From IMG/VR virus record IMGVR_UViG_3300024259_000010, positions 62,001 to 126,000 of that record: DNA of 64,000 bases, one strand, 5' to 3'. The position numbers were made by a program, and so were the translations under genes. The notes under the pieces are model-generated. The model was not told where the DNA came from. It did no database searches and saw nothing but the letters and a program-made list of their open reading frames with translations. Shown piece by piece: positions 3,912 to 61,689 of the stretch (positions are counted from its first letter, which is position 1; every line of letters begins with the position of its first letter).

Positions 3912-3946
3912 AAAAACTCCTTTTATCTTTTTACTATTTTATCTAA

Positions 3947-3955
3947 CATAGTATG
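3947..3955. promoter_or_regulatory. Candidate bidirectional late promoter (CATAGTATG / CATACTATG)
   Basis: Matches CATnnTATG on both strands, between divergent structural genes; phiKZ late promoters carry TATG at the start site. Confidence 0.45.
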
Positions 3956-3999
3956 ATGAATTTATGTATATTTTAAGTATTTTAAAAAAGGAGTAAAAA

Positions 4000-24957: not shown

Positions 24958-25029
24958 GTCTTTCATTTTAGTTCAGATATATACTACTTATTTAGATTAA
25001 CTAATTTAAATAAATAAGAAAGGTATAAT

Positions 25030-43437: not shown

Positions 43438-44394
43438 TTACGGGGTAGTATTGGTTAATACAGTATCACCTGCAATAACACTAGATCCATTTGTAATCAC
43501 TAATGGTAATCTAACTGTACTACCTGGATTAGAAAGGTCAATAGCTGTCATACAACGATGGATACATAATTGTGTACCAACTGCTTCGGTGTATAGATCA
43601 GATCCAGCATTTACAGCTTGTCCATCAATGTTAAGCACATCGACTACCATGTCTTCACCAGAATAGAACCCTACTTCACTTATGTAAGCATAACGTCTAT
43701 TGTTATCTCTAAGAACAAGAACATACTCTTGAATATCATTAGCAGTAACAATAGCTTCACATTCATAACTAACTTCAATATGATGTGTAATTTCACCATA
43801 GTCAGTAGACTTCTTAAGTTTGGCTTCTAGTTCTTCAGGAGTCAAAGTGTCAGGATTAAAATGATTCGCAGTAACATATACATCTCCCTGTGTAGAATAG
43901 TAATCAGTCTTAAGACCTGTATCCACAGCTACCTTTTGTGTATCTACTCCATCAAACACTGTAATCTTTTTCAGGTAATATGCAGCATATTCTATACCAT
44001 CCACTTCAATTACTTTACGCATACGGAAATCATCAAGTGATGTATCGCCACCTTCTTGGTCAACCCGAACAACACGTAAAGGAATTGCTTTATGTATATC
44101 TAAGTTTTCAGCACTTGGTCTATATGGTGATGTTGGTGATAAGTAATCTAAATCAGTTCCACTAACACCTTCAAGTTCTTCCACATATGCTCCACTAATA
44201 CCAACCCCAAAGTATCTAATCTTCGGGATACCGACAGGTGGAACAATTCCATGCACTTCATATTTTTTATTTATTGTATGGTCTAAGTTAATCAGTGATC
44301 CGGTCTCATTTGACAAATCTTTCTGATTGATCAGCTGTACACGCAATCCAGTTATTGTATTAACTGTATGCATATTGCTATATATGCTCGTCAT
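43438..44394 (-). CDS. Virion baseplate-type protein (phiKZ gp127-like)
   Basis: 318 aa; YFGVG, IPLRVV, FRMRK, YAAYYLKK, ISEVGFYSGED. Confidence 0.6.
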   Translation of the reverse strand: MTSIYSNMHTVNTITGLRVQLINQKDLSNETGSLINLDHTINKKYEVHGIVPPVGIPKIRYFGVGISGAYVEELEGVSGTDLDYLSPTSPYRPSAENLDIHKAIPLRVVRVDQEGGDTSLDDFRMRKVIEVDGIEYAAYYLKKITVFDGVDTQKVAVDTGLKTDYYSTQGDVYVTANHFNPDTLTPEELEAKLKKSTDYGEITHHIEVSYECEAIVTANDIQEYVLVLRDNNRRYAYISEVGFYSGEDMVVDVLNIDGQAVNAGSDLYTEAVGTQLCIHRCMTAIDLSNPGSTVRLPLVITNGSSVIAGDTVLTNTTP

Positions 44395-44406
44395 ATCATT
44401 CTCCTA

Positions 44407-46986
44407 TTATTCATAAATTATTCTACCCCACTTTGAGTTTATTCTAATGTCATTAATATATTTACCAAATGTATCTACCGGATCATGTAACACAGCTTTA
44501 TATAAAACATTATTAGCAACTCCTTCAGTTATTGATATAACTGATATCCGAGATTCATCGTCTACATAAGCGGATGCTCCACTACGATCCTGTTGATATG
44601 TTGGATTAACATATGATGGAGAACAATCAGTTGATCGTATATAATATTTATAATAAATGAATTTTTTTAAGTCACCATTATTATCAATTAACACCATTCT
44701 ATTAATATTATTAGATGCATCTAAAATAGGTGCTGATATACTATTCAGTACATCTATGTTGGATTCTTCAAATATACCATTATAGATATCATAAAGTCCT
44801 TTATTATAAAGGGAAATAAATGAGAAAGAATGTAATTTAACAATCTCATGTATTTCAGTATCACCAGAAATATACTCATCTACCATTTCAATATCATCAT
44901 AATCTCTAAATACAAATAATTTATATCTTCCTAGTTCAGAAGATATGATTTTATTACTATCTATAATGATCAAAGATTTACTCAGTCCACCACTGTGGTC
45001 AACATTTGGTACAGTATCTTGTACTTCAACATTTACAGGACTTCCAGTGAATACATTATCTATTAATCTAATAGATCCATCTATTAACTTTACTACTAAT
45101 CTATCTTTACTAGCACTACTATACATGTCAACAGGAGAATTTGTTAAATCCAAATAACCAGTTGCCAATATTGAATCTGCAGTATATGATACTTTAAGAA
45201 TAGTATTACTACCAGATACGATCATAGCAAACGCTGGTTCATCATATATCTTTGATACTTTAACATATGTTGCTGGTGTAGACGGTGCTGGTAAGCCACT
45301 ATCGTACCCATAGAAAAGAGCATATGTTCTAGCAGAGTATAACGATAGATATTCACCATTCCTACGATATAGATATACCTTTGTTGTAGTAATGACGATT
45401 AATTGATCATCTTCATACGAAACCAGATCTAAAATATCACCTTGTACATCTAAGAAAGATCCTAATCCTAATTCATAAAATCTGCCAATATCATTATTAC
45501 ATACATAATAAGTCCTATCTCCAAGTTGTCTACACATATAGACATTATCTATGAGACCAATATCTATCTCACCAACATTTTCCAATAACATGGAATCATT
45601 GACATTATGTTCAGAATTTTGAAAGACTAATGTTAATTTTTTATTTAGTGTAGGTACGGTATGTGATAAATTTTCTACATGATCTGGGACTGGGAACTCC
45701 TCAGAATCACCCCAGTTATCTGGAGCTTTGCTATATTGTTGTTCACCATAGTAATACATATTTCGAATACCTTGTGTATATATACGTAGTTTTAATGCAG
45801 AAGATACATCATCCAAAGCACCATTATTCATATTTATAATATTCACTTCATATCCGGTTGCTTCTACAATATCTACAGGCGCGCCTGAAAATCCTTCCCA
45901 TCCAACAAATGCAGAGAATTGAGGATGTGGAGCAATTGGCATCTCAGGTGGATAATCAGTAGACATACCAATGTTCATATCTGCAGGAAACTTTACTAAT
46001 TGCCCTCTAGTACCTGGAGCAAAGAAACGTCTTGTATGATCATTGTCTACTATGTAGACATCTGAATATGGTTCACCATACATATATTGAAGTATCTGAA
46101 CATCTGCAGTGTCTGAATCACCTTCTTTGGACACTTCACATCTTTCAAAATAACTAGGCAGTAATTGTGGTATGGTAGTACCATCAGTGTCAATAGTTGA
46201 GAAGTAGTCTGTATTCTGATAGTAATGTTCATGGTTGAACTTTAATAGTCCACCGCTTGCAATACCATCTATCTCAACATCATCCACATCCCACTCATCA
46301 TAATAACAATGTTGTTCCAATACGATCTCAACCACTGGAATATCACCATCGTCAAATTCCATAAGAGGAGAATTAGCTTTACCAAATACATAGTTAGGCG
46401 AATTATCATGTGTGAAGAATAAAGCATTGGATGTAGAGCTACCACTAATCGGTGCCATTTCCAAATGTCTAGTGTGTTTCAATACAGTGATTTTTCTTTC
46501 TGTGTTTAACTCACTCTCATGTGGAGTATTAACAGTTAAGTAATTTGTAGATGCTGAAAGTAAGTTAGCAGTAGGTTTGTCATTATTTGAAACATCTCCT
46601 ACATACATTGTAGTAAAGAATATATTCTGAGAATAATCTACAATTACTTTGGCTGGATCAGTAGTGGTGTTCACAATTTGAGTTGCAGCACCAGATGGAT
46701 ATATAATAACATCATCTGTATTATCTGCATTAAACGTATCACCCTCTAATGTATTACTGGATTGAGCACCAATGAATTTTCTAAGATATGGTTTAGTACT
46801 CCCCTCAGTATATAGCGTGGCGTTCATTGACATATCACACAGACAAAAATCTTTTAATGCACTCAAACCGTATTCTGTAATAAGTGCCATGAATGGTTCT
46901 TGTGTTCCGAAATCAGCAACTTCTCCAACAAGCTTACCTACTCGCACAGAAGCACCTATATTAAACATAGGTATTTGTTTATACAT
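44407..46986 (-). CDS. Putative tail fibre / baseplate appendage protein
   Basis: 859 aa; N-terminal LITEYGL similar to FITESGL of 49162-52494; beta-rich, propeller-like C-terminus; late motif at 47022-47030. Confidence 0.5.
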   Translation of the reverse strand: MYKQIPMFNIGASVRVGKLVGEVADFGTQEPFMALITEYGLSALKDFCLCDMSMNATLYTEGSTKPYLRKFIGAQSSNTLEGDTFNADNTDDVIIYPSGAATQIVNTTTDPAKVIVDYSQNIFFTTMYVGDVSNNDKPTANLLSASTNYLTVNTPHESELNTERKITVLKHTRHLEMAPISGSSTSNALFFTHDNSPNYVFGKANSPLMEFDDGDIPVVEIVLEQHCYYDEWDVDDVEIDGIASGGLLKFNHEHYYQNTDYFSTIDTDGTTIPQLLPSYFERCEVSKEGDSDTADVQILQYMYGEPYSDVYIVDNDHTRRFFAPGTRGQLVKFPADMNIGMSTDYPPEMPIAPHPQFSAFVGWEGFSGAPVDIVEATGYEVNIINMNNGALDDVSSALKLRIYTQGIRNMYYYGEQQYSKAPDNWGDSEEFPVPDHVENLSHTVPTLNKKLTLVFQNSEHNVNDSMLLENVGEIDIGLIDNVYMCRQLGDRTYYVCNNDIGRFYELGLGSFLDVQGDILDLVSYEDDQLIVITTTKVYLYRRNGEYLSLYSARTYALFYGYDSGLPAPSTPATYVKVSKIYDEPAFAMIVSGSNTILKVSYTADSILATGYLDLTNSPVDMYSSASKDRLVVKLIDGSIRLIDNVFTGSPVNVEVQDTVPNVDHSGGLSKSLIIIDSNKIISSELGRYKLFVFRDYDDIEMVDEYISGDTEIHEIVKLHSFSFISLYNKGLYDIYNGIFEESNIDVLNSISAPILDASNNINRMVLIDNNGDLKKFIYYKYYIRSTDCSPSYVNPTYQQDRSGASAYVDDESRISVISITEGVANNVLYKAVLHDPVDTFGKYINDIRINSKWGRIIYE

Positions 46987-47064
46987 AATTCAAATCTCCT
47001 GTTAGTTAATTAAATTCTATACATAAAATGGGGGATATCATTATTTTAGAATAAAGTAATAAGA

Positions 47065-47096
47065 CTAGTATGGTGTCCAATTGGACACCATACTAG
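47065..47096. terminator. 32-bp perfect palindrome (terminator)
   Basis: CTAGTATGGTGTCCAA|TTGGACACCATACTAG. Confidence 0.7.
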
Positions 47097-47112
47097 CTAT
47101 ATTTATATTTGT

Positions 47113-49092
47113 TTATCCTTGAGCACTAATAGTATCTTTATCACCATCAATATATCGCTGGAGATACATATTCTCTCTTTCACAATTGTCAACTAAATCT
47201 TTATCATAAGAATAGTTATATTCAGGTATAGAAAAATCAGTACCACATACTTCATTTAAATATACGAGATTATCAGATGGTTTCCACAATGGAACAAATG
47301 TAATATTTGGTGCATTATATAATAAATATCTACATATACGTGATTGTAATAATTTATTATATGATAGATAGTCTTCACTTATTGATCCACAAAATGTTCT
47401 AAACTGATTTTTTAATCGACCTTCTAATATAGCATTATAAGAAGGAGAATTTATCACATTATGTAGATCTTTCATATGCATTCGTTTATGCAAATGATCA
47501 CTCAAGTACATTTTATTAAATCGGTATATAACAACATCTTCCGGTTTATGTAATAAAATAAAGAATTTGTAATCTTCTATAAATTTAGGCAACCACCTAT
47601 CTCTATAGTAGAATACTCCATTAGTCACATTACGCCCTTCTAATTTTTTTACACGATTCCATAAAGTATCTCTGTTTTTATAACCATCACGATTGAACAT
47701 AATAGTACTAATAACCGCTTTTTCATTTTTATAAATTTGGTACCTTTTACTAACAAGTTCATTTTCAATGGGTTTAATAGTTTCATTAATACCTTTTCCA
47801 GATACATGGTAAAATGTATCCATATGATATATAGATTCATGTTCCATTCGTTCAGCTACAATAGTCATGTCTTTCAATCTACTGACAGCTGATTCTTTAT
47901 CAACTTCTACTGATACCGGTACATATTTTTTAACTTTATCATATACATAATCAACTATATCTTCATATGAATTAGTAGACGATACTACAAGTTTGTCGTA
48001 ATCACATACGAAATAGTTATTTTCTGATGCACCCACGGAACAGGCTCTTCGATTCATACCAGGTTCACGTCTCCTAGAGAAAGCATATAGAACATTGCAT
48101 TGTATCATGTGCTTAAAATCTATACACGTATCTACTGACTTTAATACACGAACAGCTTCATCATCTGAATATGTTAAAGGCGTAGGATCAGATTCATGCT
48201 TTATAGTTCTAACTTTTTTATCTGGTGAAAATAATCCATATAAAACATTAACTAATATATCTCCTCCTGAATCTTTATCACCGGCTTGAATTATCAGCAA
48301 AAAATCTTTCACTTTATAATTCACATTTCCATAATACTTAATATTCTTGATAGTTGATCCCCAGAATCCATGGTCGAACATTGCTCGCCCTTTACCTTCT
48401 TTAGATATTAATGTTTTATTCTCGGTTGGGTTAAAATAACCAGCTAATGCACCATAGCCAGATTGTATAGTAATCAAGTTCTTTGCTTTATATAGATAGT
48501 AGAAATCTCTATCCGGTGATATAGATGATCGTAATGTAACACTATGTCCTAGTTTGGTAAATGCTATGATCAACTTATCCATAGTATCAATATCAGCTTG
48601 TAACCGGTCTTTAGAAAACGATTTTGCCGTGGGGTAATGTAATCCTATAACAATAGTTACTTTTTTTAGATTGATATCACGTAACTTATGTTTTATCAAT
48701 CTCATGTAATTCTTAAAATCATCTTTCACTGTTACTAATTGATCGCTGAGACGTAATGCTATAACAACCTCATCATCTTCAGGTACATCATAATCCTTGC
48801 AATGATCATTTAAAATTTCAACAAATTTTTCTTCAGAATATAATTCTTTATTATCAATACACCAGTTTAAATATTTGTACATGAATGTGTCTTCATGTTT
48901 TTGATCATTGAGAATATTCCATTCAGCGGTATTGTTTCTCTTATACGCATCTGATAGTCTATAAGCTGTTCTATCTGTATTTATAAGACGTATGTCACAT
49001 ATATCTTTAAATCTAGGATGTTCCATATCTAGATATTCAATAACATCACCCACAGATCCACAATCATCTAAATTATAACAAAAATCACTCAT
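47113..49092 (-). CDS. Multidomain glycosyltransferase-like (GT11-type) / degenerate sulfotransferase-like protein
   Basis: 659 aa; IALRLSD (cf. HxRxGD) and PDRDFYYLYKAKNLITIQSGYG; second domain begins IIQAGDKDSGGD (cf. GxxRSGST). Confidence 0.45.
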   Translation of the reverse strand: MSDFCYNLDDCGSVGDVIEYLDMEHPRFKDICDIRLINTDRTAYRLSDAYKRNNTAEWNILNDQKHEDTFMYKYLNWCIDNKELYSEEKFVEILNDHCKDYDVPEDDEVVIALRLSDQLVTVKDDFKNYMRLIKHKLRDINLKKVTIVIGLHYPTAKSFSKDRLQADIDTMDKLIIAFTKLGHSVTLRSSISPDRDFYYLYKAKNLITIQSGYGALAGYFNPTENKTLISKEGKGRAMFDHGFWGSTIKNIKYYGNVNYKVKDFLLIIQAGDKDSGGDILVNVLYGLFSPDKKVRTIKHESDPTPLTYSDDEAVRVLKSVDTCIDFKHMIQCNVLYAFSRRREPGMNRRACSVGASENNYFVCDYDKLVVSSTNSYEDIVDYVYDKVKKYVPVSVEVDKESAVSRLKDMTIVAERMEHESIYHMDTFYHVSGKGINETIKPIENELVSKRYQIYKNEKAVISTIMFNRDGYKNRDTLWNRVKKLEGRNVTNGVFYYRDRWLPKFIEDYKFFILLHKPEDVVIYRFNKMYLSDHLHKRMHMKDLHNVINSPSYNAILEGRLKNQFRTFCGSISEDYLSYNKLLQSRICRYLLYNAPNITFVPLWKPSDNLVYLNEVCGTDFSIPEYNYSYDKDLVDNCERENMYLQRYIDGDKDTISAQG

Positions 49093-49119
49093 AATTACTT
49101 ATTCCTTTTTTAAAGAAAA

Positions 49120-49153
49120 AATACATAGTAGGGTTTTACCCCCACTATGTATT
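49120..49153 (-). terminator. Terminator hairpin
   Basis: AATACATAGT..GGG/CCC..ACTATGTATT with an A run on the left. Confidence 0.6.
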
Positions 49154-49161
49154 GATTTAAC

Positions 49162-52100
49162 CTACCCGCGATTCCATATATTCTCAATAACAATATTGCT
49201 CAATATACTATCGGCGACTGGTTCAGGAGTATTTAAAACAAATGCCCATGAAACAGCTTCAACGTAGTTATCTGCGATAGGGATAATCATACCAGTATGG
49301 AAATTATCCATATTGTTAAATACAATTGATCCTACTACCTTAGATTTTTCAACACTATTCAATGTCCGTGCCGTATGATAAAATATTTTATCAACAGCCT
49401 TACCAGCATATACATATACATTATCACTGATAACACCTATTACTTTAATTGCAAAAGAAGATGCCAGATTATAGGAATCTGATCTTACACCAAATTCATG
49501 ATCTGTGATAATAAGTCTACCATTACCATCCCTCATACATAATTCATAACCATTGTTAATAAGTTCTCTATAACCATAAGTGTTACCACGTTCAATTGTA
49601 GCTGTTCCAATAGGGTCGTCCCAGTTAATACTAGAGATGTCAATGTTATCAGATCTATAACCAAGCTCACTATATGCAACACTGAGTCTATCACCTAATA
49701 GAGCAGATGATATATTAGTTACATTAGCACTTACATTATCACATAAATGTAATGGAGCATCTAATGTTGAAAATGATATAGCATCACATAGACAAGAGAT
49801 AATGGATAACTGATTGGTAATTGCATATAATCTAGTACCATCGTGTGCAAGTCTAGGTATTGTTAATAAGATATCATCTCTAACTACATTTACATTTGCA
49901 GTACCTTCTATTTCAAGTTCACCAACAGTGTCTTCCAAATCCATAGTATCATTAACAGTTGAATATACTTCAAGGGTTAACGAATCTTGATCAGTAGCAT
50001 GGTTATTATAACCTCGTGAAACTACAAAACTATCAGTTCCAGGAATTGTACAGAATGTAGTCCACGGTTGAGATGTTCCATCTATAGAGTGCAATATGTC
50101 TATAGTACCAGCATCATATGACACCAGGTATCGCCATGTATCAGTTGCTACAACAAACTTAAATGTATCATTATCAGTTTCGTAAACTATAGCTATATCT
50201 AGAACAGTAGTAGCACCAGTTTCGGGAGTGTAATCCATACCAGGTACTTTAAATCTATTAGAAGAAACATTATCTCCAGATATATTTACAATTGCTGCTA
50301 CATTGTTTGGTTCTGATAACAGATTAGCTTCAGTCCATGATATAAATTCAACAAATCCATCATCCTGCATTACTGCTGAGATTGTATCTGTAAATTTATA
50401 GAATCTAACAGCTTTAGATACAACACTGAGTTCCTTAGCTGCATTATGGAATGATGCTAAGTTGGTAGATATCTGTGTGGAGTACTCATGATCAACATAA
50501 CGCATAGGACTTGCTGTATTGGCACTATCAAATAATACAGATGTGGTTGTATTCAATTTACAGAATGCATCCAATCTAGATAAGATAGTTCCTTTTTCCA
50601 ATTTGTCCAATGTTAAGTTGAAATTATGAATAACACCAGATGGATATTCGATAAATCCTACATTATGTAGTTCGATAGCAGTAGTGCCAGAACTAACTAC
50701 AACTGTTTGTTTCCAAAGTAGTTCTGTATCAGTAACTTGGAAAAGTGTTACAACACCATTATCCTCAACTGCTACAAATCCTGGATTCAAAGCCTCATAG
50801 TCAATACTATTTAACAGTACCATAGAAGAGATAGCAGACGTTGGCGTATTAGATAATAATCGATTATCATCAATATAAGTAAACGTAGCTCCACCTTCCA
50901 GTAGTAACATAACTGTTTGAGAATTATCTGAAGCAACCAAATAGGTATTAACTCCAAGTGATACCACTTTCGATAATTCACCAATAGGTTTAGATGTTGT
51001 ATATGGATCTAAATCAGAAGTTGTGTCTGCTGCACCACTAAGGATATTCCATTTCGTTATATCATATGTTCCACTGATAATAACAATATTGTCTTCATCG
51101 ATTTTATCAAAATCAATTGCAACGGGACTACCTGCGGTTGCTAGATAATTTACTGTATTAAAAGCCGGTGGGTATAGAGTAAATACCCCAGTTGCATGAT
51201 CTATGTTGTAAGCGATTATATTACCGGAAACAAGAACTAAGCATACACCATTATCAGCAGTATGTCCAGTAGGTTCAAAATAAAGTATCTTTTCAATATC
51301 TGGACCAGTGCTAAGCTCGGTATCTAATAGGACAATATTACCATTAGCAACACTGTATGATTTTAGATCATTGCCAGATCCAGTAACATACATCGTATCA
51401 GTCACCCGTGTCATATCTTTAACAACATCTGTAGTAACTAAGGTGGCTTTATCTTTTACTTCATAGATGTTAGAATTATTAGCTTCGAGATCACGTGTCT
51501 TATTAGATACGATAAGGCTTAACCCAGTGTATCTAGAAAACTTTCCTTCAAGGATTGTATTCTCAACAGTAGGTGGAATTGTGACACCAGTAAGAGGATT
51601 GATATATGAATAATAACCTTCTTTGAACTCTCTATTATGCACAGCACATGCAGTTTTGATAGTCCCATTGTAACCACTAATAGTACTAGAGATACCATCA
51701 ATTGGATCGCATGATATTTTTCTAACCAATGTTACTTTAACATAAGGTGCTTCACCATTCTGGAAGGTCAAAGTAACATTACGTCTACCGAACAATGTAC
51801 TGTATGAACCACTATCGCAATCACCAACCACTGATTGTCCATCAATAGTAAGATCTGGAGCAATTTGACTATCATCAAGTGTGTTGGTCCAACCGATCTC
51901 AGTAAAAGTAATCGGTGCAGTTACAGGATCGAAGAACACACTTCTTGTATTAGTGATAGTGACCATTTCATTAGATGGGTCTAATGACTTCTTATTGAAG
52001 ATACCATCCCCACCAGTATCGTAATTACTTGAAACTAATTTAGGGTTTTCAAGTTTTTCAAAATACTCCTCCGCTATCCAACCATTACCATGAAACTCCG

Positions 52101-52494
52101 CAGTAGACCCTGTAGCATAAAATACATAACTACCACCACCACTAGCACCAGCGTTGTAACCAGTTAGTTGAATAGTCTGGTGATCTTCTGTTAACAATAC
52201 ATAGTTACCATCCTTTGTACCATCTGGAGGATTTCCAGAAGGAGTGTAGTTAGTAAGAGTTACAAATGCTTCACCTGCATTTTTAGAAATAGTTACTGGG
52301 TTAGGTGCAAGTGTTTCACCAGTACCCAACATAACGTAATTTGTCATGTTAGCAAACCAGTCTTCACGTATTTTCTCTAAGCCCGATTCTGTGATAAAGT
52401 TATGATCTTCTTCTGTTATCCAGGTGACTTTACCATTGACATGTTTGCCAACTTGAAAGATTACCCCAATGTCTCTTGAATTTTTAATATTCAT
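49162..52494 (-). CDS. Putative tail fibre / receptor-binding protein
   Basis: 1110 aa; N-terminal HNFITESGL...YVMLGTG...TEIG typical of baseplate-attachment domains; beta-propeller-like body; late motif at 52528-52536. Confidence 0.55.
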   Translation of the reverse strand: MNIKNSRDIGVIFQVGKHVNGKVTWITEEDHNFITESGLEKIREDWFANMTNYVMLGTGETLAPNPVTISKNAGEAFVTLTNYTPSGNPPDGTKDGNYVLLTEDHQTIQLTGYNAGASGGGSYVFYATGSTAEFHGNGWIAEEYFEKLENPKLVSSNYDTGGDGIFNKKSLDPSNEMVTITNTRSVFFDPVTAPITFTEIGWTNTLDDSQIAPDLTIDGQSVVGDCDSGSYSTLFGRRNVTLTFQNGEAPYVKVTLVRKISCDPIDGISSTISGYNGTIKTACAVHNREFKEGYYSYINPLTGVTIPPTVENTILEGKFSRYTGLSLIVSNKTRDLEANNSNIYEVKDKATLVTTDVVKDMTRVTDTMYVTGSGNDLKSYSVANGNIVLLDTELSTGPDIEKILYFEPTGHTADNGVCLVLVSGNIIAYNIDHATGVFTLYPPAFNTVNYLATAGSPVAIDFDKIDEDNIVIISGTYDITKWNILSGAADTTSDLDPYTTSKPIGELSKVVSLGVNTYLVASDNSQTVMLLLEGGATFTYIDDNRLLSNTPTSAISSMVLLNSIDYEALNPGFVAVEDNGVVTLFQVTDTELLWKQTVVVSSGTTAIELHNVGFIEYPSGVIHNFNLTLDKLEKGTILSRLDAFCKLNTTTSVLFDSANTASPMRYVDHEYSTQISTNLASFHNAAKELSVVSKAVRFYKFTDTISAVMQDDGFVEFISWTEANLLSEPNNVAAIVNISGDNVSSNRFKVPGMDYTPETGATTVLDIAIVYETDNDTFKFVVATDTWRYLVSYDAGTIDILHSIDGTSQPWTTFCTIPGTDSFVVSRGYNNHATDQDSLTLEVYSTVNDTMDLEDTVGELEIEGTANVNVVRDDILLTIPRLAHDGTRLYAITNQLSIISCLCDAISFSTLDAPLHLCDNVSANVTNISSALLGDRLSVAYSELGYRSDNIDISSINWDDPIGTATIERGNTYGYRELINNGYELCMRDGNGRLIITDHEFGVRSDSYNLASSFAIKVIGVISDNVYVYAGKAVDKIFYHTARTLNSVEKSKVVGSIVFNNMDNFHTGMIIPIADNYVEAVSWAFVLNTPEPVADSILSNIVIENIWNRG

Positions 52495-52570
52495 ATTAAA
52501 CTTCCTTTATTTAAAAAATTGTTTACACATAAAATGGGTAACTTATATTTTTTTATATTATATGTTAAAG

Positions 52571-52606
52571 CATACATAGAGTGGGTATATACCCACTCTA
52601 TGTATG
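52571..52606. terminator. 36-bp perfect palindrome (terminator of the rSAM gene)
   Basis: CATACATAGAGTGGGTAT|ATACCCACTCTATGTATG. Confidence 0.7.
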
Positions 52607-52617
52607 ATATTTTAGTT

Positions 52618-53982
52618 TTATTTATCTTTGTTCTTATAGCGTTCTGGTACAGGCTTATTTATAAGTTTGTACAAATGATCTCTATCTAAATCTGTCACTA
52701 ATCTCATAGCAGTTTTCATGCGTAATTTATTACCCACGCATTTCATTTCAACATTATCATCAACATCATTTGTTTCAGAATGAGTTTTATTATGTTGTGG
52801 ACATGTTCCAGCACATACACCTCGTATATCACAATCTAAACAATTTGGATTCCAACCACTTCCGGTTGTTAACCACGGTGCACGTAGTTTAGGATCGATA
52901 CCAGTTTCAGCATCACCGATTTTACAATCTGTTACACATTGACATGCATGTATTTCACCATTGAATCCAATAGTTATATAATTTCTACCAGCACCACATG
53001 CCATCATTTTAGGTCGTGGTGTTAAAAAATTCCTAAGGTAATTATTTGTTAAATCAGGCCACTTGATAGATTTATCTTTATGTGTTTTACTCAAGAACCA
53101 GTCTACAGCTATATCTAATTGTTGTTCTAAATTAGAAGACCACTCTTTAAGTTGTTCTGGTGTATACCCAGGGATAATTGCTTCTCTTAAGTGAAATGTG
53201 ACACCAAGACCATTCTTGAGAAGGTTATTAAAGAATATTAACTTATCGCGCATGATAAGTGGTCCACCTTGCCCATAGTCCCCAGTACAACTCCATTGTA
53301 TCCTTCTTATTAATCTAGGGTGTGTCTTTTTGAGTCTATACATCATATCAAAAAGTTTATCATATGATCCTTTGCCATTACCAAATATCCTAGTCCTATC
53401 ATGAATCTCTTTAGGACCATCACATGATACTTTAATAGATATACCATTATCATTGAACCAGTCAGCGATTATTTCATCGCCTTCCCAATCTTTAATATGT
53501 TTAGATATTTTATCCTCAAGCAATAACCCATTTGTTGTCACATGGAATTTAGTCTTATCATATGTAGATTTGATATACTGTTGGACTTCATATACCGTTT
53601 TAAAGTTTACAAGAGCCTCACCCCCCATATATGTAATGGAAATACTTTTATACTTATCTGCTGGCAATTGTTTATCAAAGAAATATTTAATTTCCTCAAA
53701 ATTCATATTATTAGTATTAATTGCATCGTTTTCTATAAGATTATCCATAGCATAGCAATACGTACATCTCATGTTACATAATTTAGTTGTAGTTATAGCA
53801 ACAGACATTGTCTCGTCACTAATTTTTGTAGGTTTTGTATAGTTTGGTATATCTCTAGTAGGCTTAGTATGAGTTACTATATTCTCTGCATTTTTTTGAT
53901 TAGCTGCAATCATATAACTGTGATTTAGATTGTTCATTACAATTTTTTTATCACTTCCCATGACATCATATATTTTCAACAT
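52618..53982 (-). CDS. Radical SAM/SPASM-domain maturase
   Basis: CNMRCTYC (CxxxCxxC), MGGEAL, TTNG, SCDGP..IHD..R, SPASM CGAG...GEIHAC...CLDCDIRGVCAGTC...C; AAGGAG RBS. Confidence 0.92.
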   Translation of the reverse strand: MLKIYDVMGSDKKIVMNNLNHSYMIAANQKNAENIVTHTKPTRDIPNYTKPTKISDETMSVAITTTKLCNMRCTYCYAMDNLIENDAINTNNMNFEEIKYFFDKQLPADKYKSISITYMGGEALVNFKTVYEVQQYIKSTYDKTKFHVTTNGLLLEDKISKHIKDWEGDEIIADWFNDNGISIKVSCDGPKEIHDRTRIFGNGKGSYDKLFDMMYRLKKTHPRLIRRIQWSCTGDYGQGGPLIMRDKLIFFNNLLKNGLGVTFHLREAIIPGYTPEQLKEWSSNLEQQLDIAVDWFLSKTHKDKSIKWPDLTNNYLRNFLTPRPKMMACGAGRNYITIGFNGEIHACQCVTDCKIGDAETGIDPKLRAPWLTTGSGWNPNCLDCDIRGVCAGTCPQHNKTHSETNDVDDNVEMKCVGNKLRMKTAMRLVTDLDRDHLYKLINKPVPERYKNKDK

Positions 53983-54021
53983 ATTAGTTTTTTACTCCTT
54001 ATTACTTATTATTAAAAATCC

Positions 54022-54041
54022 TGGGGGTATTACTACCCCCA
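54022..54041 (-). terminator. Short GC hairpin (weak terminator/attenuator) between Cys-rich gene and rSAM gene
   Basis: TGGGGGTA-ttac-TACCCCCA; T5 follows on the minus strand after 3 nt. Confidence 0.5.
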
Positions 54042-54050
54042 TTTATTTAG

Positions 54051-57000
54051 TTATTCTCCACCTGAACCCTGATTTTCGGAACCGTGACAACCACCAGTAC
54101 AAGTTTGATCCTCTGGATCACATTGTGCTTGATCCTCATTGTCATCACATGCAAGATCGGCACATCCTTGATCTTCACCTGGATCACATGTTGTCTCATT
54201 TTCAGATTGACAACCTTGTTCTTCCTCTGCCCCACTACAACCTTGTTCTTCAGCAGGATCGCAATCGAAGTCCATAGCCTCTTCGTCATCACATGTTGTA
54301 ACTTTGGTATCACCACAATCTACAGTCAGTCCTGCATCAGTACAAGTAACAGTTGGTGCATTTTCAGAGCAACCAGCTATTTCATCACACGTACAATCTA
54401 ACCCAATCTTTTCACCATTATTTCCACATCCACCACTAGGAATAGGTTCTTCACACAAATCATTACCCTCGTAGCAATCCCCAGGTCCTGCATTATATTC
54501 ATAACAAATTGGGCAACTGATTTCAACGTTCAAACATATTGGAGATGATATAGTATCATTAACACATAGAACATCTTCTAAAGTACATGTAACACCTGAT
54601 ACACAATCAACATCCATATAATCTTCACCTGCATCACATTGAACACCGTAAATAATCTGTAACGATTTTTCTAATGACCCTGAAGGTATATTGTACTCAT
54701 CACCACATAAAGAACCATCGATCTCCATATTGATATCTAACGTTGGTCTATTTACATAACCATCGGAACATAGATTACCTTCTACTACAGATGTAGTATT
54801 AAACAAATCATATTCCTTAACATTAGTGTTTATCAAACTAGCTTCCACAAGTTTTGTATATAATTCAGTTGAATCAGCAGTTCCCTTAATAAGGTTCCCA
54901 ACAATAATTTTTAATACAGATTGTACAGTACTTCCAGGTATTTCATATGTAATAGTTTCTTGGTAGTTAGCTGGTAATAAAGCTGCACTTACTAGCTTAG
55001 TATAAAGATCAAGTTGGTCTTTAGAACTACGTAAAATAGCACCTACAATAATATCGATAGATGATTCAGTAACGGATGGCGCTATGCTGTACCCATCTGT
55101 ACACATATTACCTTCTATTGAATATTCTAACTCAATTGCTTCTTTAACACTATAACTATCAGTACATAACTTACCATCTTCAAGAGCTGGTATTATATAC
55201 GTAGCATCTTCAGAAGTAGGACCATTTAAATGTGAACTAACAAGTTTCCAATATATCTCATTGGAACCAGTAATACTTTTAATAATATTACCCATTTCAA
55301 TTTTGTTAAATAATTTGGTCACACTAGCTAGATCATACTCTACCTGTCCATCAAGATTACTCTTATAGTGATGATATATAATAAACGGAGGAGGAGGAGG
55401 ATCTTCACGTGGTACTACAATAAAGGTAGGATCGTCATCTATTGGTACAATAGGATCAGCAGGTTCAGTTCCTAGAATAGGACCAATTTTAGGTGCAATG
55501 AATTTAATACTAGCATCCGAAGGTATAGCAAGTTCAAACTGTGCAGTATCATCGTAGATAATAGAACCAAGGATTTCATGATCCTTTACTAGTGAACTAG
55601 TATCAAAGAACGTGATATCATAAGTACACATCTGTACGAACAACTGTCGCATGAGCTTTTGTTCTTCTGCAGTTAGATCACCAAACTGTACATAGTCGGA
55701 TTCTTTGATTGGTAACATCTGTACTAGAATCTCTTCCATCAAATCACCAAAGGCAATCTTAGGATTGTCAGCAGCATTCAATGAATCAGTTAAGTTCCGC
55801 AAAGAATCATTTGTATCAAACCATTCTTCATATGTAGTGATAGAACCAAATGTGTCATACTCAATATCAACAATCCCTATTTCTAGTAACTGGTAATATA
55901 AATAATCAAATGACCTATTATATACTTTATCTGAATTGGTCCTGACCTTAATAAAGTCAGATAGCTTATCGCCATATGTTGTATCCATCCAAGAAACAAG
56001 CTCTTCTTTACTAGAGAAGTTATGACCCTGTTGTACAAGTGTACGAGTAGTCAAATCAGGTGATGGATTATTCTTAGCATCGATATTCGTTAGACGAATA
56101 ACTTCATCTGCATCTGGAGTAGCCCCATCTGGTAAACCTAAAAGATATCCCTGTAAGTTTGGTTGGAAGATATAATCAATATTAATAGTAGATACATCAT
56201 TACTTGCACCATGAATCTCCAATAGAAATTCTTTTGTGATTTCAGCAAGGTTTAACTTAAACGGTCTTCTGACTGAGAACTTAGTAGGTATTTTAGATGG
56301 ACCTGGATATGTAACGTATGCTCCAATAAAGTTATTAGCATTCTGATTTGTAATCAAAACGCGAGACTTATCGAAGATAACATCCTTATCAATAAAGTTA
56401 TCAATATTATCAGGTGTTAATAATACTGTAGGTGCTTCAGCACTATATAAACAATATTGGAACAATGCAAATGCTTCTTTTATAGTTAATGGTAAACCAC
56501 CAGAGACACGATCTGATCGAACATTAATAAGATTATCATAATCCACAGTACATGATGTATTCTGGTTAGATAACATATATGTGAATGACTCTAAAGCATA
56601 CTTGATATATTCAAGCCCGATCTGATAACTAACATTAGTTCTAACAAACTGTACAAGTTTAGTTGGAAGTGTTGAGTTCTCAATTCTTGATAATTTATAA
56701 TCTTGTTCATCTAATAGATCAGGTCCAATATCAGGTTCAATACCATCATTAACTTCCTGAGCATAAGTAGTTGCTAACGTTTGTTGCATTGCTTCGATAT
56801 TACCAATATTAATATAGTCTTTAGTAATATCTTTAGATAAAACTTGTGATGTAGGTACACATCGAGATTCCGAACCAGATGTTTCAATAGCAACATATTT
56901 AGATACGAGAGTGATGTTATAATCTTTAAGTAGATTATTAGCAAGGATCTCAAGAGTTTCAATAGTACCTTTATGATTAAGAAGATATCTAATATTCTTA

Positions 57001-58037
57001 TACATAAACATCTGTTGTTTATCGTTCAATACATCGCGGTAATCACCAATACCTTTAGATTTCAGATATGCCCAAATAAGATCAGTGTGAACTGATGCTG
57101 TATGCATATTATCAATACGCTGTTGTAATACTACATTTGGTAACAATGTCCACAAGATGGTCCAATAAATAATATGACCATACTTTTCAAACTCCATGTA
57201 TTCAGGTACATTCCATCTTTCATTGAATACGATTAAGAATGATTGTAGTGCTTGTACAATAGAACCAAGTTCACTGTACTCTAAGAACTGAGGCTGTAGT
57301 TCAGTACCCTTTGCTGAATAACCAATTAATTCAAAATCATTAACTTGTATTAGATTGTTTTCCATATCAAAACAAATCTTACTATTGTTATATGCTTTAG
57401 TGTATTCATCAAACTTGTCTATATTAGAAATGTAAGTTTCCCATGCAGGAAGATTAGTCTGCTTAAGAATCAGCTCTTCATCTGCATCCAATACATCCAT
57501 ATGGATATGTTCTAATATTGTAACTGGGTAGAAAATATTCTTAATCAAATCTGCTTGATCAGGATAACGTTCGAGTAGATCAGTAAAACCATCTCTGTTG
57601 TAATAATAGAAATAACTAGTCTTACGCAATCTAGAGTCATTTAAAGTACTCTTAGTAAGGGGTATAGTACCATTTAGTCTGTGGGTTTCACCGGCTTCAA
57701 CACTACCACCTAGATCAGTATAATCATCAATAGTGAGCAAGTCTTGCACACGCATTACCATAGGTGTGTTGTTCAATCCAGCTGGATCTTCAGCATGGTT
57801 ATATGAAGCAAGTTCTGGATATAACAAATCACCATCTACTGTAAGATTGGCAATATCCGCAGTATTAAAAAATTCACCCTGTAAATTAATAACATAGGGA
57901 TTATGAGCATCTTTAATCTCATCTATTGTCAATGCTTCTAATTTATTTTTATAGTACTGTTTCATATACGGATTGTATACAGAAATAGTCTGCAGAAATC
58001 CATAAATTTCTTGAATAAAGATAGACATATTGTTCAT
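54051..58037 (-). CDS. Large virion baseplate-type protein (phiKZ gp128-like) with repeat region and Cys/acidic C-terminal tail
   Basis: 1328 aa; divergent from portal; HTDLIWAYLKSKG and FMYKNIRYLLNHKGT are baseplate-wedge-like; Pro linker, repeats, then 25 Cys in the last 195 aa. Confidence 0.7.
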   Translation of the reverse strand: MNNMSIFIQEIYGFLQTISVYNPYMKQYYKNKLEALTIDEIKDAHNPYVINLQGEFFNTADIANLTVDGDLLYPELASYNHAEDPAGLNNTPMVMRVQDLLTIDDYTDLGGSVEAGETHRLNGTIPLTKSTLNDSRLRKTSYFYYYNRDGFTDLLERYPDQADLIKNIFYPVTILEHIHMDVLDADEELILKQTNLPAWETYISNIDKFDEYTKAYNNSKICFDMENNLIQVNDFELIGYSAKGTELQPQFLEYSELGSIVQALQSFLIVFNERWNVPEYMEFEKYGHIIYWTILWTLLPNVVLQQRIDNMHTASVHTDLIWAYLKSKGIGDYRDVLNDKQQMFMYKNIRYLLNHKGTIETLEILANNLLKDYNITLVSKYVAIETSGSESRCVPTSQVLSKDITKDYINIGNIEAMQQTLATTYAQEVNDGIEPDIGPDLLDEQDYKLSRIENSTLPTKLVQFVRTNVSYQIGLEYIKYALESFTYMLSNQNTSCTVDYDNLINVRSDRVSGGLPLTIKEAFALFQYCLYSAEAPTVLLTPDNIDNFIDKDVIFDKSRVLITNQNANNFIGAYVTYPGPSKIPTKFSVRRPFKLNLAEITKEFLLEIHGASNDVSTINIDYIFQPNLQGYLLGLPDGATPDADEVIRLTNIDAKNNPSPDLTTRTLVQQGHNFSSKEELVSWMDTTYGDKLSDFIKVRTNSDKVYNRSFDYLYYQLLEIGIVDIEYDTFGSITTYEEWFDTNDSLRNLTDSLNAADNPKIAFGDLMEEILVQMLPIKESDYVQFGDLTAEEQKLMRQLFVQMCTYDITFFDTSSLVKDHEILGSIIYDDTAQFELAIPSDASIKFIAPKIGPILGTEPADPIVPIDDDPTFIVVPREDPPPPPFIIYHHYKSNLDGQVEYDLASVTKLFNKIEMGNIIKSITGSNEIYWKLVSSHLNGPTSEDATYIIPALEDGKLCTDSYSVKEAIELEYSIEGNMCTDGYSIAPSVTESSIDIIVGAILRSSKDQLDLYTKLVSAALLPANYQETITYEIPGSTVQSVLKIIVGNLIKGTADSTELYTKLVEASLINTNVKEYDLFNTTSVVEGNLCSDGYVNRPTLDINMEIDGSLCGDEYNIPSGSLEKSLQIIYGVQCDAGEDYMDVDCVSGVTCTLEDVLCVNDTISSPICLNVEISCPICYEYNAGPGDCYEGNDLCEEPIPSGGCGNNGEKIGLDCTCDEIAGCSENAPTVTCTDAGLTVDCGDTKVTTCDDEEAMDFDCDPAEEQGCSGAEEEQGCQSENETTCDPGEDQGCADLACDDNEDQAQCDPEDQTCTGGCHGSENQGSGGE

Positions 58038-58115
58038 AATTAAAACCTTTCATTGTTAGTATTTTAATTCATATAATAGGTTACGATAATTAATTATTGA
58101 TTTAATAAAGTCACT

Positions 58116-58124
58116 CATGATATG
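58116..58124 (+). promoter_or_regulatory. Late-type promoter motif CATGATATG
   Basis: CATnnTATG ~34 nt upstream of the portal start. Confidence 0.45.
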
Positions 58125-58157
58125 AATGAATTTTAAAATCTTATAAGGAGTAGTTAC

Positions 58158-60761: not shown

Positions 60762-60780
60762 AGTTGCACTGAACAAATAA

Positions 60781-60822
60781 ATATACTACTACAGGTTGCT
60801 TGCGCAACCTGTAGTAGTATAT
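60781..60822. terminator. Bidirectional terminator
   Basis: 19-bp perfect stem ATATACTACTACAGGTTGC, loop TTGC (GCAA on minus). Confidence 0.8.
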
Positions 60823-60835
60823 ATTTTAATATCTT

Positions 60836-61684: not shown

Positions 61685-61689
61685 AGTGA

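What the first reader, a model, noticed from the sequence alone, without database searches (positions are those of the whole stretch)
43438..58037. Accessory tail-decoration block of hairpin-bounded cassettes between two core baseplate genes
Seen: rSAM, 1110-aa fibre-like, 659-aa glycosyltransferase-like and 859-aa fibre-like genes lie between two core-type structural genes, separated by hairpins (54022, 52571, 49120, 47065). The hairpins flanking the 1110-aa gene share ATACATAG...GGG/CCC...CTATGTAT, and both fibre genes have CATTTTATG upstream. As I recall, the flanking genes are neighbours in phiKZ (unverified). Inference: a swappable host-range module that brings its own modifying enzymes.
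Basis: partly seen in the sequence, partly recalled or inferred. Interest (0 to 1): 0.6.

Follow-up and report, generated by a model that had tools for sequence, protein, structure and literature searches.

The report
Lineage-specific baseplate add-on with modifying enzymes

Summary
The window belongs to a 236-kb uncultivated marine chimallivirus (phiKZ-like jumbo phage).

- **Flanking genes:** they match phiKZ gp128 (baseplate wedge) and gp139 (DUF7208 "spoke").
- **Synteny:** in the five nearest IMG/VR relatives these two genes are directly adjacent. The four genes between them, plus a ~460-residue C-terminal extension of the wedge protein, are therefore lineage-specific.
- **Hairpins:** they are intrinsic terminators. 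The genome has 153 intergenic hairpins, so they do not mark cassette borders.
- **CATTTTATG:** this is the phiKZ-type TATG late promoter, found upstream of about 30 genes.
- **phiKZ recollection:** it was wrong. In phiKZ, gp128 and gp139 lie 13 kb apart.
- **Swapping:** there is no evidence for it. Four other seawater samples show the same junctions.
- **659-aa protein:** it has a fucosyltransferase-superfamily domain and a degenerate sulfotransferase-like domain.
- **1110-aa and 859-aa proteins:** both are orphans, so "fibre-like" remains unproven.

The most interesting lead concerns the radical SAM enzyme. It is a SCIFF/PapB-type thioether maturase encoded 69 nt downstream of the wedge gene. 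The wedge protein's tail carries 26 Cys and about 56 Asp/Glu in 195 residues. I propose that the enzyme crosslinks this tail of a virion protein. This is inferred, not shown.

The parts
54051..58037 (-). Baseplate wedge gene (1328 aa), homologue of phiKZ gp128 and Goslar gp35. The conserved core runs to about residue 815. A lineage-specific extension of ~460 residues follows: a Pro-rich linker near 860-885, then modules with five C-x-D-x-Y motifs, then a Cys/Asp/Glu-rich tail at about 1134-1328.
   Evidence: PDB matches 36za_sR (2e-14) and 9xqs_C PHIKZ128 (9e-8). phrog_3222. Alignment to the nearest relatives ends at query residue ~813-815. Tail composition: 26 Cys, about 56 D/E, 2 K/R. It is the densest Cys stretch in the genome. 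The extension has no homologue.
54022..54041 (-). Short GC-rich hairpin (8 bp) followed by a T-run, between the wedge gene and the rSAM gene. No TATG promoter lies in this 68-nt gap, so the rSAM gene is probably read through from the wedge promoter.
   Evidence: Read-through is inferred.
52618..53982 (-). Radical SAM/SPASM enzyme (454 aa) with CX3CX2C at residues 69-76 and a full SPASM cysteine pattern. Closest to thioether-forming Cys-rich-peptide maturases.
   Evidence: Pfam Radical_SAM and Fer4_12. phrog_1802 at 1e-36. NCBIfam hits: PapB 7e-37, nif11 5e-34, QhpD 8e-31, SCIFF 6e-26, CcpM 1e-24, all below their equivalog cut-offs. Sequence.
52571..52606 (-). 16-bp-stem hairpin after the rSAM gene, carrying the ATACATAG arm. 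Its T-tail on the coding strand is weak.
52528..52536 (-). CATTTTATG: late-promoter-type TATG motif 37 nt upstream of the 1110-aa gene.
   Evidence: phiKZ late promoter consensus TATG: PMC4666361.
49162..52494 (-). 1110-aa orphan protein, a possible peripheral baseplate or fibre protein. Its N-terminal ~300 aa are weakly paralogous to the 859-aa protein.
   Evidence: No Pfam, PHROG, NCBIfam, PDB or phage hits. N-terminal alignment: 23% identity, z = 3.0. Atlas feature leads to viral hypothetical and beta-propeller-type clusters, all below 0.9.
49120..49153 (-). Terminator hairpin with a T-run after the 1110-aa gene. Its 3' arm CTATGTAT holds a weak TATG motif 35 nt upstream of the 659-aa gene.
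47113..49092 (-). 659-aa three-part protein. Residues 10-240 are a fucosyltransferase-superfamily (GT-B) domain with the family's invariant residues kept. Residues 265-440 are a sulfotransferase-like P-loop domain with the family's P-loop and His residues replaced. Residues 440-659 are orphan.
   Evidence: 109 homologues. Domain 1 homologues are fused to GT domains. AF2 pLDDT 91 and 88. Foldseek hits FUT8, FUT1 and POFUT1 at 4e-4. VIA hits POFUT2, POFUT1, FUT8 and NodZ at Z 8.2-6.0. Sulfotransferases at 2e-3. Residue check.
47064..47097 (-). 14-15-bp-stem hairpin after the 659-aa gene.
47022..47030 (-). CATTTTATG: late-promoter-type motif 39 nt upstream of the 859-aa gene.
44407..46986 (-). 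859-aa orphan protein, weak paralogue of the 1110-aa protein. A population variant replaces 489 nt (45643-46133, about residues 285-448) with 21 nt, in frame.
   Evidence: Only a self-hit among 5.8 billion proteins. No phage or IMG/VR relative. Atlas structural neighbours are beta-propellers at TM 0.3-0.35 on a model with pLDDT 0.38. The variant is seen in runs X2 and X4.
43438..44394 (-). DUF7208 protein (318 aa), homologue of phiKZ gp139 and Goslar gp32. In phiKZ this protein forms the dimer filament that ties the wedges to the outer baseplate.
   Evidence: Pfam PF23838 at 6e-25. PDB 9xpg_A PHIKZ139 at 1e-7. The only copy in the genome. Role taken from PMC13250141.
43391..43428 (.). 17-bp-stem bidirectional terminator between the convergent DUF7208 gene and the 500-aa gene.
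58158..60761 (+). Portal gene (phiKZ gp129 homologue), divergent from the wedge gene. It anchors the synteny comparison.
   Evidence: PDB 9xpe_M PHIKZ129 at 1e-41. phrog_3004.

Best explanation
The region is the baseplate-periphery locus of a marine phiKZ-like jumbo phage. One lineage has expanded it.

Shown:
- The wedge gene (gp128-like) and the spoke gene (gp139-like, DUF7208) are contiguous in the nearest relatives.
- Here they are separated by four lineage-specific genes, and the wedge protein has gained a ~460-residue C-terminal extension.
- The genes are expressed from ordinary phiKZ-type late promoters (TATG motif) and end at ordinary intrinsic terminators.

Inferred:
- The two large orphan paralogues (1110 and 859 aa) are virion proteins of the outer baseplate. 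They occupy the slot that other chimalliviruses fill with DUF7941 fibre-type proteins.
- The radical SAM/SPASM enzyme is co-transcribed through a leaky hairpin with the wedge gene. It installs Cys-to-Asp/Glu (ranthipeptide/SCIFF-type) thioether crosslinks in the Cys- and acid-rich tail of the wedge protein, making a redox-insensitive knotted appendage on the virion.
- The 659-aa enzyme uses its fucosyltransferase-like domain to glycosylate a virion protein. The 1110-aa protein encoded just upstream of it is a candidate target.
For: - **Identity of the flanks:**, with roles taken from the phiKZ atlas (PMC13250141) and the Goslar structure preprint.
- **Insertion:** the five nearest relatives show portal<->wedge (708-776 aa)->DUF7208 with gaps of -8 to 52 nt and the same convergent downstream genes. 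None of the five has a match to this rSAM beyond its core motif region; one, G004, has only a weak hit (E 1e-6, residues 52-158) in a 506-aa ORF elsewhere in its genome. None of 24 wedge homologues has a Cys-dense tail.
- **Promoters and terminators:**
- **rSAM type:**. Its nearest homologues are bacterial SCIFF maturases encoded directly downstream of a SCIFF peptide (for L050), and a phage rSAM (L007) downstream of Cxxx-repeat proteins and an 1804-aa FG-GAP protein with a Cys-rich C-tail.
- **Another jumbo phage:** Erwinia phage pEa_SNUABM_9 has two CSG-repeat ORFs 2 kb upstream of its rSAM.
- **Wedge tail:** it is the densest Cys stretch in the genome and ends 69 nt upstream of the rSAM start. 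That gap has no promoter motif and no room for a separate precursor gene.
- **GT domain:**. A two-domain homologue of the 659-aa protein again lies beside rSAM and SPASM genes and a GT2 gene on a 121-kb contig, whose SPASM-domain protein matches a phage protein family (phrog_7293).
Against: - There is no proteomic, structural or biochemical evidence that any block protein is in the virion or is modified.
- The 1110-aa and 859-aa proteins have no homologues. They show no similarity to DUF7941 or to the phiKZ gp131-135 N-termini. Their paralogy is marginal (z = 3).
- The rSAM scores far below every NCBIfam equivalog cut-off, and it has only about 60 residues ahead of its core, less than a typical leader-recognition (RRE) domain.
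- The tail spacing (Cys every 7-10 residues) matches no defined target family. PF27846 was not hit.
- The complex prediction gave no answer.
- A Cys/acid-rich tail could instead bind metal or form disulfides.
- The nearest relatives share only 26-32% protein identity, so the timing and direction of the change (gain here or loss elsewhere) are not resolved.
Confidence: 0.6

Rival explanations
1. The block is a mobile, exchangeable host-range cassette set. The palindromic hairpins serve as recombination borders, so whole fibre genes and their enzymes are swapped between phages.
For: The wedge-DUF7208 interval differs between chimallivirus clades: 0, 1-2 or 7 genes. The 859-aa gene has an in-frame domain-scale variant in two seawater samples. 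The block genes are orphans, as expected for fast-evolving receptor binders.
Against: The hairpins are no different from about 150 others across the genome, and their shared 8-mer is at background frequency. No alternative cassette was found in IMG/VR, GenBank phages or the 5.8-billion-protein set. Four other seawater samples show the same junctions. GC content of the block (0.28-0.36) matches the genome. The variant breakpoints at 45643 and 46133 lie inside the gene, not at hairpins.
Confidence: 0.15
2. The radical SAM enzyme and the 659-aa enzyme act on something other than virion proteins. Candidates are a host or phage small molecule, nucleotide or sugar, or host surface glycans. In that case their position in the structural locus is incidental, and the Cys/acid-rich wedge tail is a metal-binding or disulfide-rich domain.
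For: Many jumbo phages carry rSAM genes of unknown role outside structural loci. The rSAM is below all family cut-offs. In L044 and L007 the rSAM genes sit among several glycosyltransferase genes, which would also fit a sugar pathway.
Against: The top 25 NCBIfam hits shown are almost all peptide or protein maturases, and the best five (PapB, nif11, QhpD, SCIFF, CcpM) act on Cys-rich substrates. The nearest homologues lie next to Cys-rich substrates in 4 of the 6 contexts with readable neighbouring DNA. The rSAM and the tail are both present here and both absent in relatives.
Confidence: 0.2
3. The ancestral state included the block, or DUF7941-type genes, and the five nearest relatives lost it. 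Under this reading the 1110-aa and 859-aa proteins are extremely diverged DUF7941-type proteins with large C-terminal additions.
For: Most chimalliviruses have one or two DUF7941 genes exactly in this interval. Goslar has DUF7941 proteins with added C-terminal binding domains. This genome has no recognisable DUF7941 gene anywhere.
Against: Profile-profile comparison of the two N-termini with nine DUF7941 proteins gave nothing (probability 0.2%). The five nearest relatives also lack DUF7941 in the interval.
Confidence: 0.15

Closest known systems
phiKZ / Goslar baseplate locus (gp128 wedge, gp127/126 DUF7941, gp139 spoke; Goslar gp35, gp34-31)
   Same: Divergent portal and wedge genes. The wedge gene is followed on the same strand by small outer-baseplate genes that include one DUF7208 gene. 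Late TATG promoters are present.
   Different: There are no DUF7941 genes here. Instead there are four unrelated genes: rSAM, 1110 aa, 659 aa and 859 aa. The wedge protein is about 1.7 times longer and has a Cys/acid-rich tail. In phiKZ, gp139 has moved 13 kb away.
Ranthipeptide / SCIFF systems (PapA-PapB, SCIFF-ScfB/CteB) and QhpC-QhpD
   Same: An rSAM/SPASM enzyme most similar to these maturases is encoded directly downstream of a Cys- and Asp/Glu-rich sequence, separated from it by a hairpin.
   Different: The candidate substrate is the C-terminal 200 residues of a 1328-aa virion protein, not a 40-60-residue peptide with a leader. There is no transporter or protease. The enzyme is below the family cut-offs. 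The Cys spacing of 7-10 differs from CX3D or SCIFF. QhpC, a protein subunit crosslinked by QhpD, is the nearest precedent for a structural (non-peptide) target; that comparison rests on my own knowledge.
CXXX-repeat rSAM target systems (NCBIfam TIGR04115, Pfam PF27846)
   Same: The phage homologue on L007 carries a PF27846 protein near its rSAM, and its large tail-like protein ends in Cxxx repeats. The Erwinia phage pEa_SNUABM_9 has CSG repeats upstream of its rSAM.
   Different: The window's tail does not match PF27846 and has a longer, irregular spacing.
Protein O-fucosyltransferases and FUT8/NodZ (GT65, GT68, GT23)
   Same: The fold of residues 40-250 of the 659-aa protein matches, and the family-invariant Arg and Asp residues (YRLxD, LRLxD, DxD) are conserved.
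   Different: Z is only 6-8 and identity is 10-16%. Only about 160-170 residues align. The domain is fused to a degenerate sulfotransferase-like domain and an orphan C-terminal domain. Donor and acceptor are unknown.

Membership tests
Chimalliviridae (phiKZ-like) baseplate wedge, gp128 family | Sequence homology to phiKZ gp128 and Goslar gp35 | tested here: met
   PDB phmmer hits 36za_sR at 2e-14 and 9xqs_C at 9e-8. tblastn to 83 phage records.
Chimalliviridae (phiKZ-like) baseplate wedge, gp128 family | Position divergent from the portal gene | tested here: met
DUF7208 / phiKZ gp139 spoke protein | Pfam PF23838 above the gathering score | tested here: met
   88.2 bits against a cut-off of 27. 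PDB PHIKZ139 at 1e-7.
DUF7941 fibre-cloud proteins | PF25613 match in the 1110-aa or 859-aa protein | tested here: not met
   No hit even at E 10. hhalign probability 0.2%. None found in the genome, although that search's control genomes also gave no hits.
phiKZ gp131-135 tail fibres | Shared gp131-like N-terminal domain | tested here: not met
   hhalign of the two N-termini against gp131/133/134/135 gave probability 0.1%. BLASTP found nothing.
phiKZ gp131-135 tail fibres | C-terminal seven-bladed beta-propeller | tested here: inconclusive
   Only weak leads: Atlas neighbours LVIVD and WD40 at TM 0.3 on a model with pLDDT 0.38, and Pizza propeller at E 0.014. No confident model could be made.
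Radical SAM / SPASM peptide maturases | CX3CX2C motif and rSAM domain | tested here: met
   PF04055 at 44.4 bits against a cut-off of 29.5. CNMRCTYC at residues 69-76.
Radical SAM / SPASM peptide maturases | SPASM auxiliary-cluster cysteines (CX9-15GX4C ... CX2CX5CX3C ... C) | tested here: met
   CGAGRNYITIGFNGEIHAC and CLDCDIRGVCAGTC read directly from the sequence. The PapB model is covered over positions 4-324 of 330.
PapB / SCIFF ranthipeptide maturases (equivalog level) | Score above the NCBIfam equivalog cut-off | tested here: not met
   127 bits against 340 (PapB). 91 bits against 425 (SCIFF).
PapB / SCIFF ranthipeptide maturases (equivalog level) | Adjacent Cys-rich substrate with acidic acceptor residues | tested here: met
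   The wedge tail has 26 Cys and about 56 D/E in 195 aa and ends 69 nt upstream. It is a protein tail, not a leader-bearing peptide.
PapB / SCIFF ranthipeptide maturases (equivalog level) | Thioether crosslinks formed | not testable with these tools
   Needs mass spectrometry of the co-expressed proteins.
Fucosyltransferase superfamily (GT23/GT65/GT68, GT-B) | Fold similarity of a confident model | tested here: met
   pLDDT 91. POFUT2 at Z 8.2, POFUT1 at 8.1, FUT8 at 7.1, NodZ at 6.3. Foldseek probability 0.99-1.0. The Z values are in the range the tool calls middling.
Fucosyltransferase superfamily (GT23/GT65/GT68, GT-B) | Pfam family match | tested here: not met
   No Pfam hit for the protein. 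Only 1 of 39 homologues touches Glyco_transf_11 or O-FucT, at E 0.01.
Sulfotransferases | PAPS-binding P-loop and catalytic His | tested here: not met
   The family consensus SPxxTGST / KTH / HGSHRNR reads AGDKDSGGD / KSV / SGKGINE in this protein. Fold match is weak, at E 2e-3.
Exchangeable cassette bounded by specific repeats | Border repeats specific to the block | tested here: not met
Exchangeable cassette bounded by specific repeats | Alternative cassettes between the same flanks in relatives | tested here: not met
   None found. Close relatives are lacking, so absence is weak evidence.

The most novel reading that the evidence does not exclude
A jumbo phage matures one of its own virion proteins in the way a RiPP is matured. 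A SCIFF/PapB-like radical SAM enzyme installs multiple thioether crosslinks in the Cys/Asp/Glu-rich C-terminal appendage of the baseplate wedge protein. Possibly, with the neighbouring POFUT-like enzyme, the virion protein is also glycosylated. The same logic (an rSAM gene beside Cys-repeat tails of large tail proteins) recurs in other large phages, namely L007 and Erwinia phage pEa_SNUABM_9. That would make it an unrecognised class of post-translational hardening of phage host-contact structures.
Probability: 0.35. Interest if true: 0.8.

Novelty: new variant of a known kind. Interest (0 to 1): 0.55.

Why it matters
The synteny result is a modest but clean case. It shows which slot of the chimallivirus baseplate locus accepts lineage-specific additions. 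This is the same slot that holds the DUF7941 fibre genes in Goslar-type phages and a seven-gene array in Xoo-sp14.

The larger point is the enzyme-substrate pairing. Radical SAM/SPASM thioether maturases are known from small secreted peptides and from one enzyme subunit (QhpC). A virion structural protein as substrate would extend RiPP-type chemistry to phage particles. It would also explain orphan rSAM genes in jumbo phages and give a directly testable system: co-express two genes and weigh the product.

Tried and rejected
- **Megablast of the whole block against GenBank phages:** no match.
- **The search for related loci with single proteins (wedge, 1110 aa, 859 aa):** no close relatives in IMG/VR. 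With the domain-1 alignment the tool found no conserved stretch to search with.
- **Word-based homologue searches:** for the 859-aa protein and for the wedge extension, only self-hits.
- **tblastn of the 1110-, 859- and 659-aa proteins against phages:** nothing.
- **PDB sequence searches for the three block proteins, and profile searches for the two 659-aa domains:** nothing significant.
- **DUF7941 and gp131 N-terminal hypotheses for the two big proteins:** rejected at the sequence-profile level.
- **Complex prediction of the rSAM with wedge residues 1125-1328:** no answer (score 0.00). This is neither support nor evidence against.
- **Logan contig ending at window 52577, inside the hairpin after the rSAM gene:** considered as a sign of a strain breakpoint, then set aside. 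The contig is 100% identical to the window, so an assembly break at the hairpin or at low coverage is at least as likely, although a longer hairpin at 60781-60822 did not break the same contig.
- **Sigma-70 promoters:** not enriched, 79 found against 91.5 expected.
- **Tandem repeats in the wedge tail DNA:** none of note.
- **Structure predictions:** The orphan 1110-aa and 859-aa proteins were not folded, because the Atlas model of the 859-aa protein has pLDDT 0.38.


Full report
**What the window is**

The window is bases 62001-126000 of a 235,833-bp IMG/VR virus record, with about 33% G+C. Its portal, wedge and spoke proteins match chains of the solved phiKZ virion:
- PHIKZ129, 1e-41
- PHIKZ128, 9e-8
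- PHIKZ139, 1e-7

The best tblastn hits are to phiKZ-like jumbo phages at about 20-27% identity. The octamer TATATTAC lies upstream of 33 genes. From memory, this is the phiKZ early promoter. Near-identical DNA is found only in seawater metagenomes. The genome is therefore an uncultivated marine chimallivirus.

**Observation check**

The hairpins are not special to this block:
- The genome has 153 intergenic hairpins with perfect or G-U stems of 8 bp or more, in the 10.5% of the sequence that is intergenic.
- 121 of 253 genes have a hairpin within 70 nt downstream.
- Stems of 13-19 bp are common across the window.

The shared arm ATACATAG is also unremarkable:
- It occurs 18 times in the genome against 17 expected.
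- Among 84 long intergenic hairpins, 3.4% of pairs share an arm word of 8 or more letters, and several unrelated pairs share 11-17.
- With five hairpins in the block (ten pairs), one such pair is unsurprising.

CATTTTATG occurs five times in the genome, about the chance number. However, all five copies lie 30-40 nt upstream of a start codon. Aligning every TATG at -24 to -46 gives a consensus CATTnTATG(T/A)A before about 30 genes, including the wedge, portal, 1110-aa and 859-aa genes. In phiKZ the late promoters of the non-virion RNA polymerase have exactly this TATG core, with the G as the start site (PMC4666361).

**Synteny**

According to the phiKZ atlas (PMC13250141):
- gp128 is the baseplate wedge protein.
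- gp139 forms dimers that tie the wedges to the outer, fibre-bearing baseplate.
- gp131-135 are the fibres.

In phiKZ itself, gp128 and gp139 are 13 kb apart, with the portal, gp130 and the fibre genes between them.

The inference nevertheless holds for closer relatives. An alignment of DUF7208 proteins pulled 34 IMG/VR loci. The results for the wedge-DUF7208 interval were:

| Group | Loci | Interval content |
|---|---|---|
| Five best matches (26-32% identity; also share the downstream 509-aa gene) | L010-L013, L016 | Nothing. Wedge (708-776 aa) and DUF7208 are separated by -8 to 52 nt, then the same convergent genes as in the window |
| Goslar, RAY, PhiEaH1 and many IMG/VR loci | various | One or two DUF7941 genes |
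| Xoo-sp14-like phages | L014, L015 | Xoo-sp14 itself has seven inverted genes; the two IMG/VR loci show several intervening ORFs with DUF7941 modules |
| One further locus | L036 | Seven other genes |

In the window the interval is 9.66 kb with four genes. None of the four is DUF7941-like. The wedge protein aligns to relatives only up to about residue 815 of 1328.

The block is therefore a lineage-specific occupant of a slot that is variable across the family. Because the nearest relatives are so distant, gain here and loss elsewhere cannot be separated. No alternative cassette between similar flanks was found.

In four other seawater samples, short contigs at 95-100% identity bridge the DUF7208/859 junction (two runs) and the 859/659 junction (three runs) exactly as in the window. 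The only structural variant is an in-frame replacement of 489 nt by 21 nt inside the 859-aa gene, seen in two runs. Its ends are not at hairpins.

**The genes**

*Radical SAM enzyme.* The 454-aa protein has the CX3CX2C motif and a complete SPASM cysteine pattern. Its best NCBIfam matches are PapB (7e-37, covering the whole model), nif11, QhpD, SCIFF and CcpM maturases. All of these act on Cys-rich substrates, and all the matches are below the equivalog cut-offs.

*659-aa protein.* An exhaustive search found 109 relatives and showed three parts.
- Residues 10-240 belong to a family whose members are sometimes fused to GT domains. This protein keeps all of that family's invariant residues (YRLxD, LRLxD, DxD). 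An AlphaFold2 model (pLDDT 91) matches POFUT2, POFUT1, FUT8 and NodZ at Z 8.2-6.0, with Foldseek probability about 1. 'Glycosyltransferase-like' is therefore supported, specifically the fucosyltransferase superfamily.
- Residues 265-440 belong to a family with a sulfotransferase-like consensus and a weak sulfotransferase fold match. This protein has lost the P-loop and histidines that are nearly invariant in that family.
- Residues 440-659 are orphan.

*1110-aa and 859-aa proteins.* Neither has a homologue in any library searched. Their first ~300 residues align colinearly at 23% identity, with z = 3.0 and 2 of 300 shuffles as good. Hints of beta-propeller structure are weak. 'Fibre-like' remains a guess based on size, position and late promoters.

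**The lead that goes beyond the finding**

The wedge extension ends in about 195 residues with 26 Cys, about 56 Asp/Glu and 2 Lys/Arg. Cysteines fall every 7-10 residues, as in CDPAEEQGCSGAEEEQGCQSENETTCDPGEDQGC. Five C-x-D-x-Y motifs precede this stretch. It is the most Cys-dense stretch in the genome.

The rSAM gene starts 69 nt after the wedge stop codon. It lies behind a short GC hairpin, with no TATG promoter and no room for a separate precursor gene.

The rSAM's nearest relatives sit next to Cys-rich substrates:
- Bacterial SCIFF maturases lie directly downstream of a SCIFF peptide. P0010 sits in the same YajC/DUF3792 neighbourhood, though no SCIFF gene was called there. L050 has a 48-aa SCIFF-like ORF directly upstream of its rSAM.
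- A 572-aa phage rSAM on a 209-kb contig (L007) is preceded by a PF27846 Cxxx-repeat protein, a 258-aa protein with 45 Cys, and an 1804-aa FG-GAP protein with a Cys-rich C-terminus.
- In Erwinia jumbo phage pEa_SNUABM_9, two unannotated ORFs of CSG repeats (20-21 Cys each) lie 2 kb upstream of its rSAM.

Conversely, none of 24 wedge homologues has a Cys-dense tail. None of the five nearest relatives has a match to this rSAM beyond its core motif region; one has a weak hit elsewhere in its genome.

I therefore propose that the enzyme crosslinks the wedge protein's own tail. The hairpin would act as an attenuator that sets a low ratio of enzyme to structural protein.

The same layout repeats once more in the block. 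The 1110-aa gene is followed by a hairpin and then the 659-aa enzyme gene, which has only a weak promoter match. A two-domain homologue of the 659-aa protein again lies beside rSAM and SPASM genes and a GT2 gene on a 121-kb contig, whose SPASM-domain protein matches a phage protein family, phrog_7293.

All of this is inference. The complex prediction gave no answer.

**Verdict**

- The 'accessory block between core baseplate genes' idea is supported against the nearest relatives.
- 'Hairpin-bounded swappable cassettes' is not supported.
- The block is best described as a lineage-specific outer-baseplate expansion with two protein-modifying enzymes. The rSAM-wedge tail pairing is the part worth an experiment.

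Read laying was given 5,991 letters. No alternative genetic code was used.

Noticed in passing
window 32717-35353 (- strand): An 878-aa protein has a ~300-residue N-terminal part followed by a ~570-residue run that is almost entirely Glu/Asp with Val/Thr/Ser. This explains the local G+C rise (0.43) and the strong skews seen.
   Followed up: partly
whole genome G000; for example upstream of the gene at window 39167: TATATTAC occurs upstream of 33 genes, mostly outside the structural region, usually 43-60 nt before the start codon. From memory it matches the phiKZ early (virion RNA polymerase) promoter.
   Followed up: partly
window 45643-46133 (inside the 859-aa gene): In two other seawater metagenomes (X2, X4), contigs replace these 489 nt with the same 21 nt. 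This is an in-frame loss of 156 codons between the N-terminal domain and the rest of the protein.
   Followed up: partly
L052 3102-3890 (Erwinia phage pEa_SNUABM_9, MW812341.1 about 174054-174842): Two unannotated plus-strand ORFs of 127 and 131 aa consist largely of CSG-type repeats, with 20-21 Cys each. They lie 2 kb upstream of the phage's rSAM gene and overlap small annotated hypothetical genes.
   Followed up: no
L007 1-11719 (Logan contig, 209 kb): Three consecutive Cys-repeat proteins, one of 1804 aa with FG-GAP repeats, precede a homing endonuclease gene and the closest phage homologue of the window's rSAM. GT1-like genes flank them.
   Followed up: partly
L044 198-8871 (JGI contig, 121 kb): A 579-aa homologue of both enzyme-like domains of the 659-aa protein lies between a 238-aa rSAM gene and a GT2 gene. 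A separate SPASM-domain gene (phrog_7293) lies 5 kb downstream.
   Followed up: partly
window 52577: A Logan contig that is 100% identical to window 52577-63961 ends inside the hairpin after the rSAM gene. A longer hairpin at 60781-60822 did not break the same contig.
   Followed up: partly
window 3911-4000: The divergent genes at 2856-3911 (-) and 4000-5283 (+) share an 88-nt gap with overlapping, mutually complementary TATG motifs. This looks like a back-to-back late promoter pair.
   Followed up: no
window 24988-25013 and genome position equivalent to window coordinate 124051: An identical 26-nt AT-rich hairpin, TTATTTAGATTAACTAATTTAAATAA, occurs at two distant intergenic sites.
   Followed up: no
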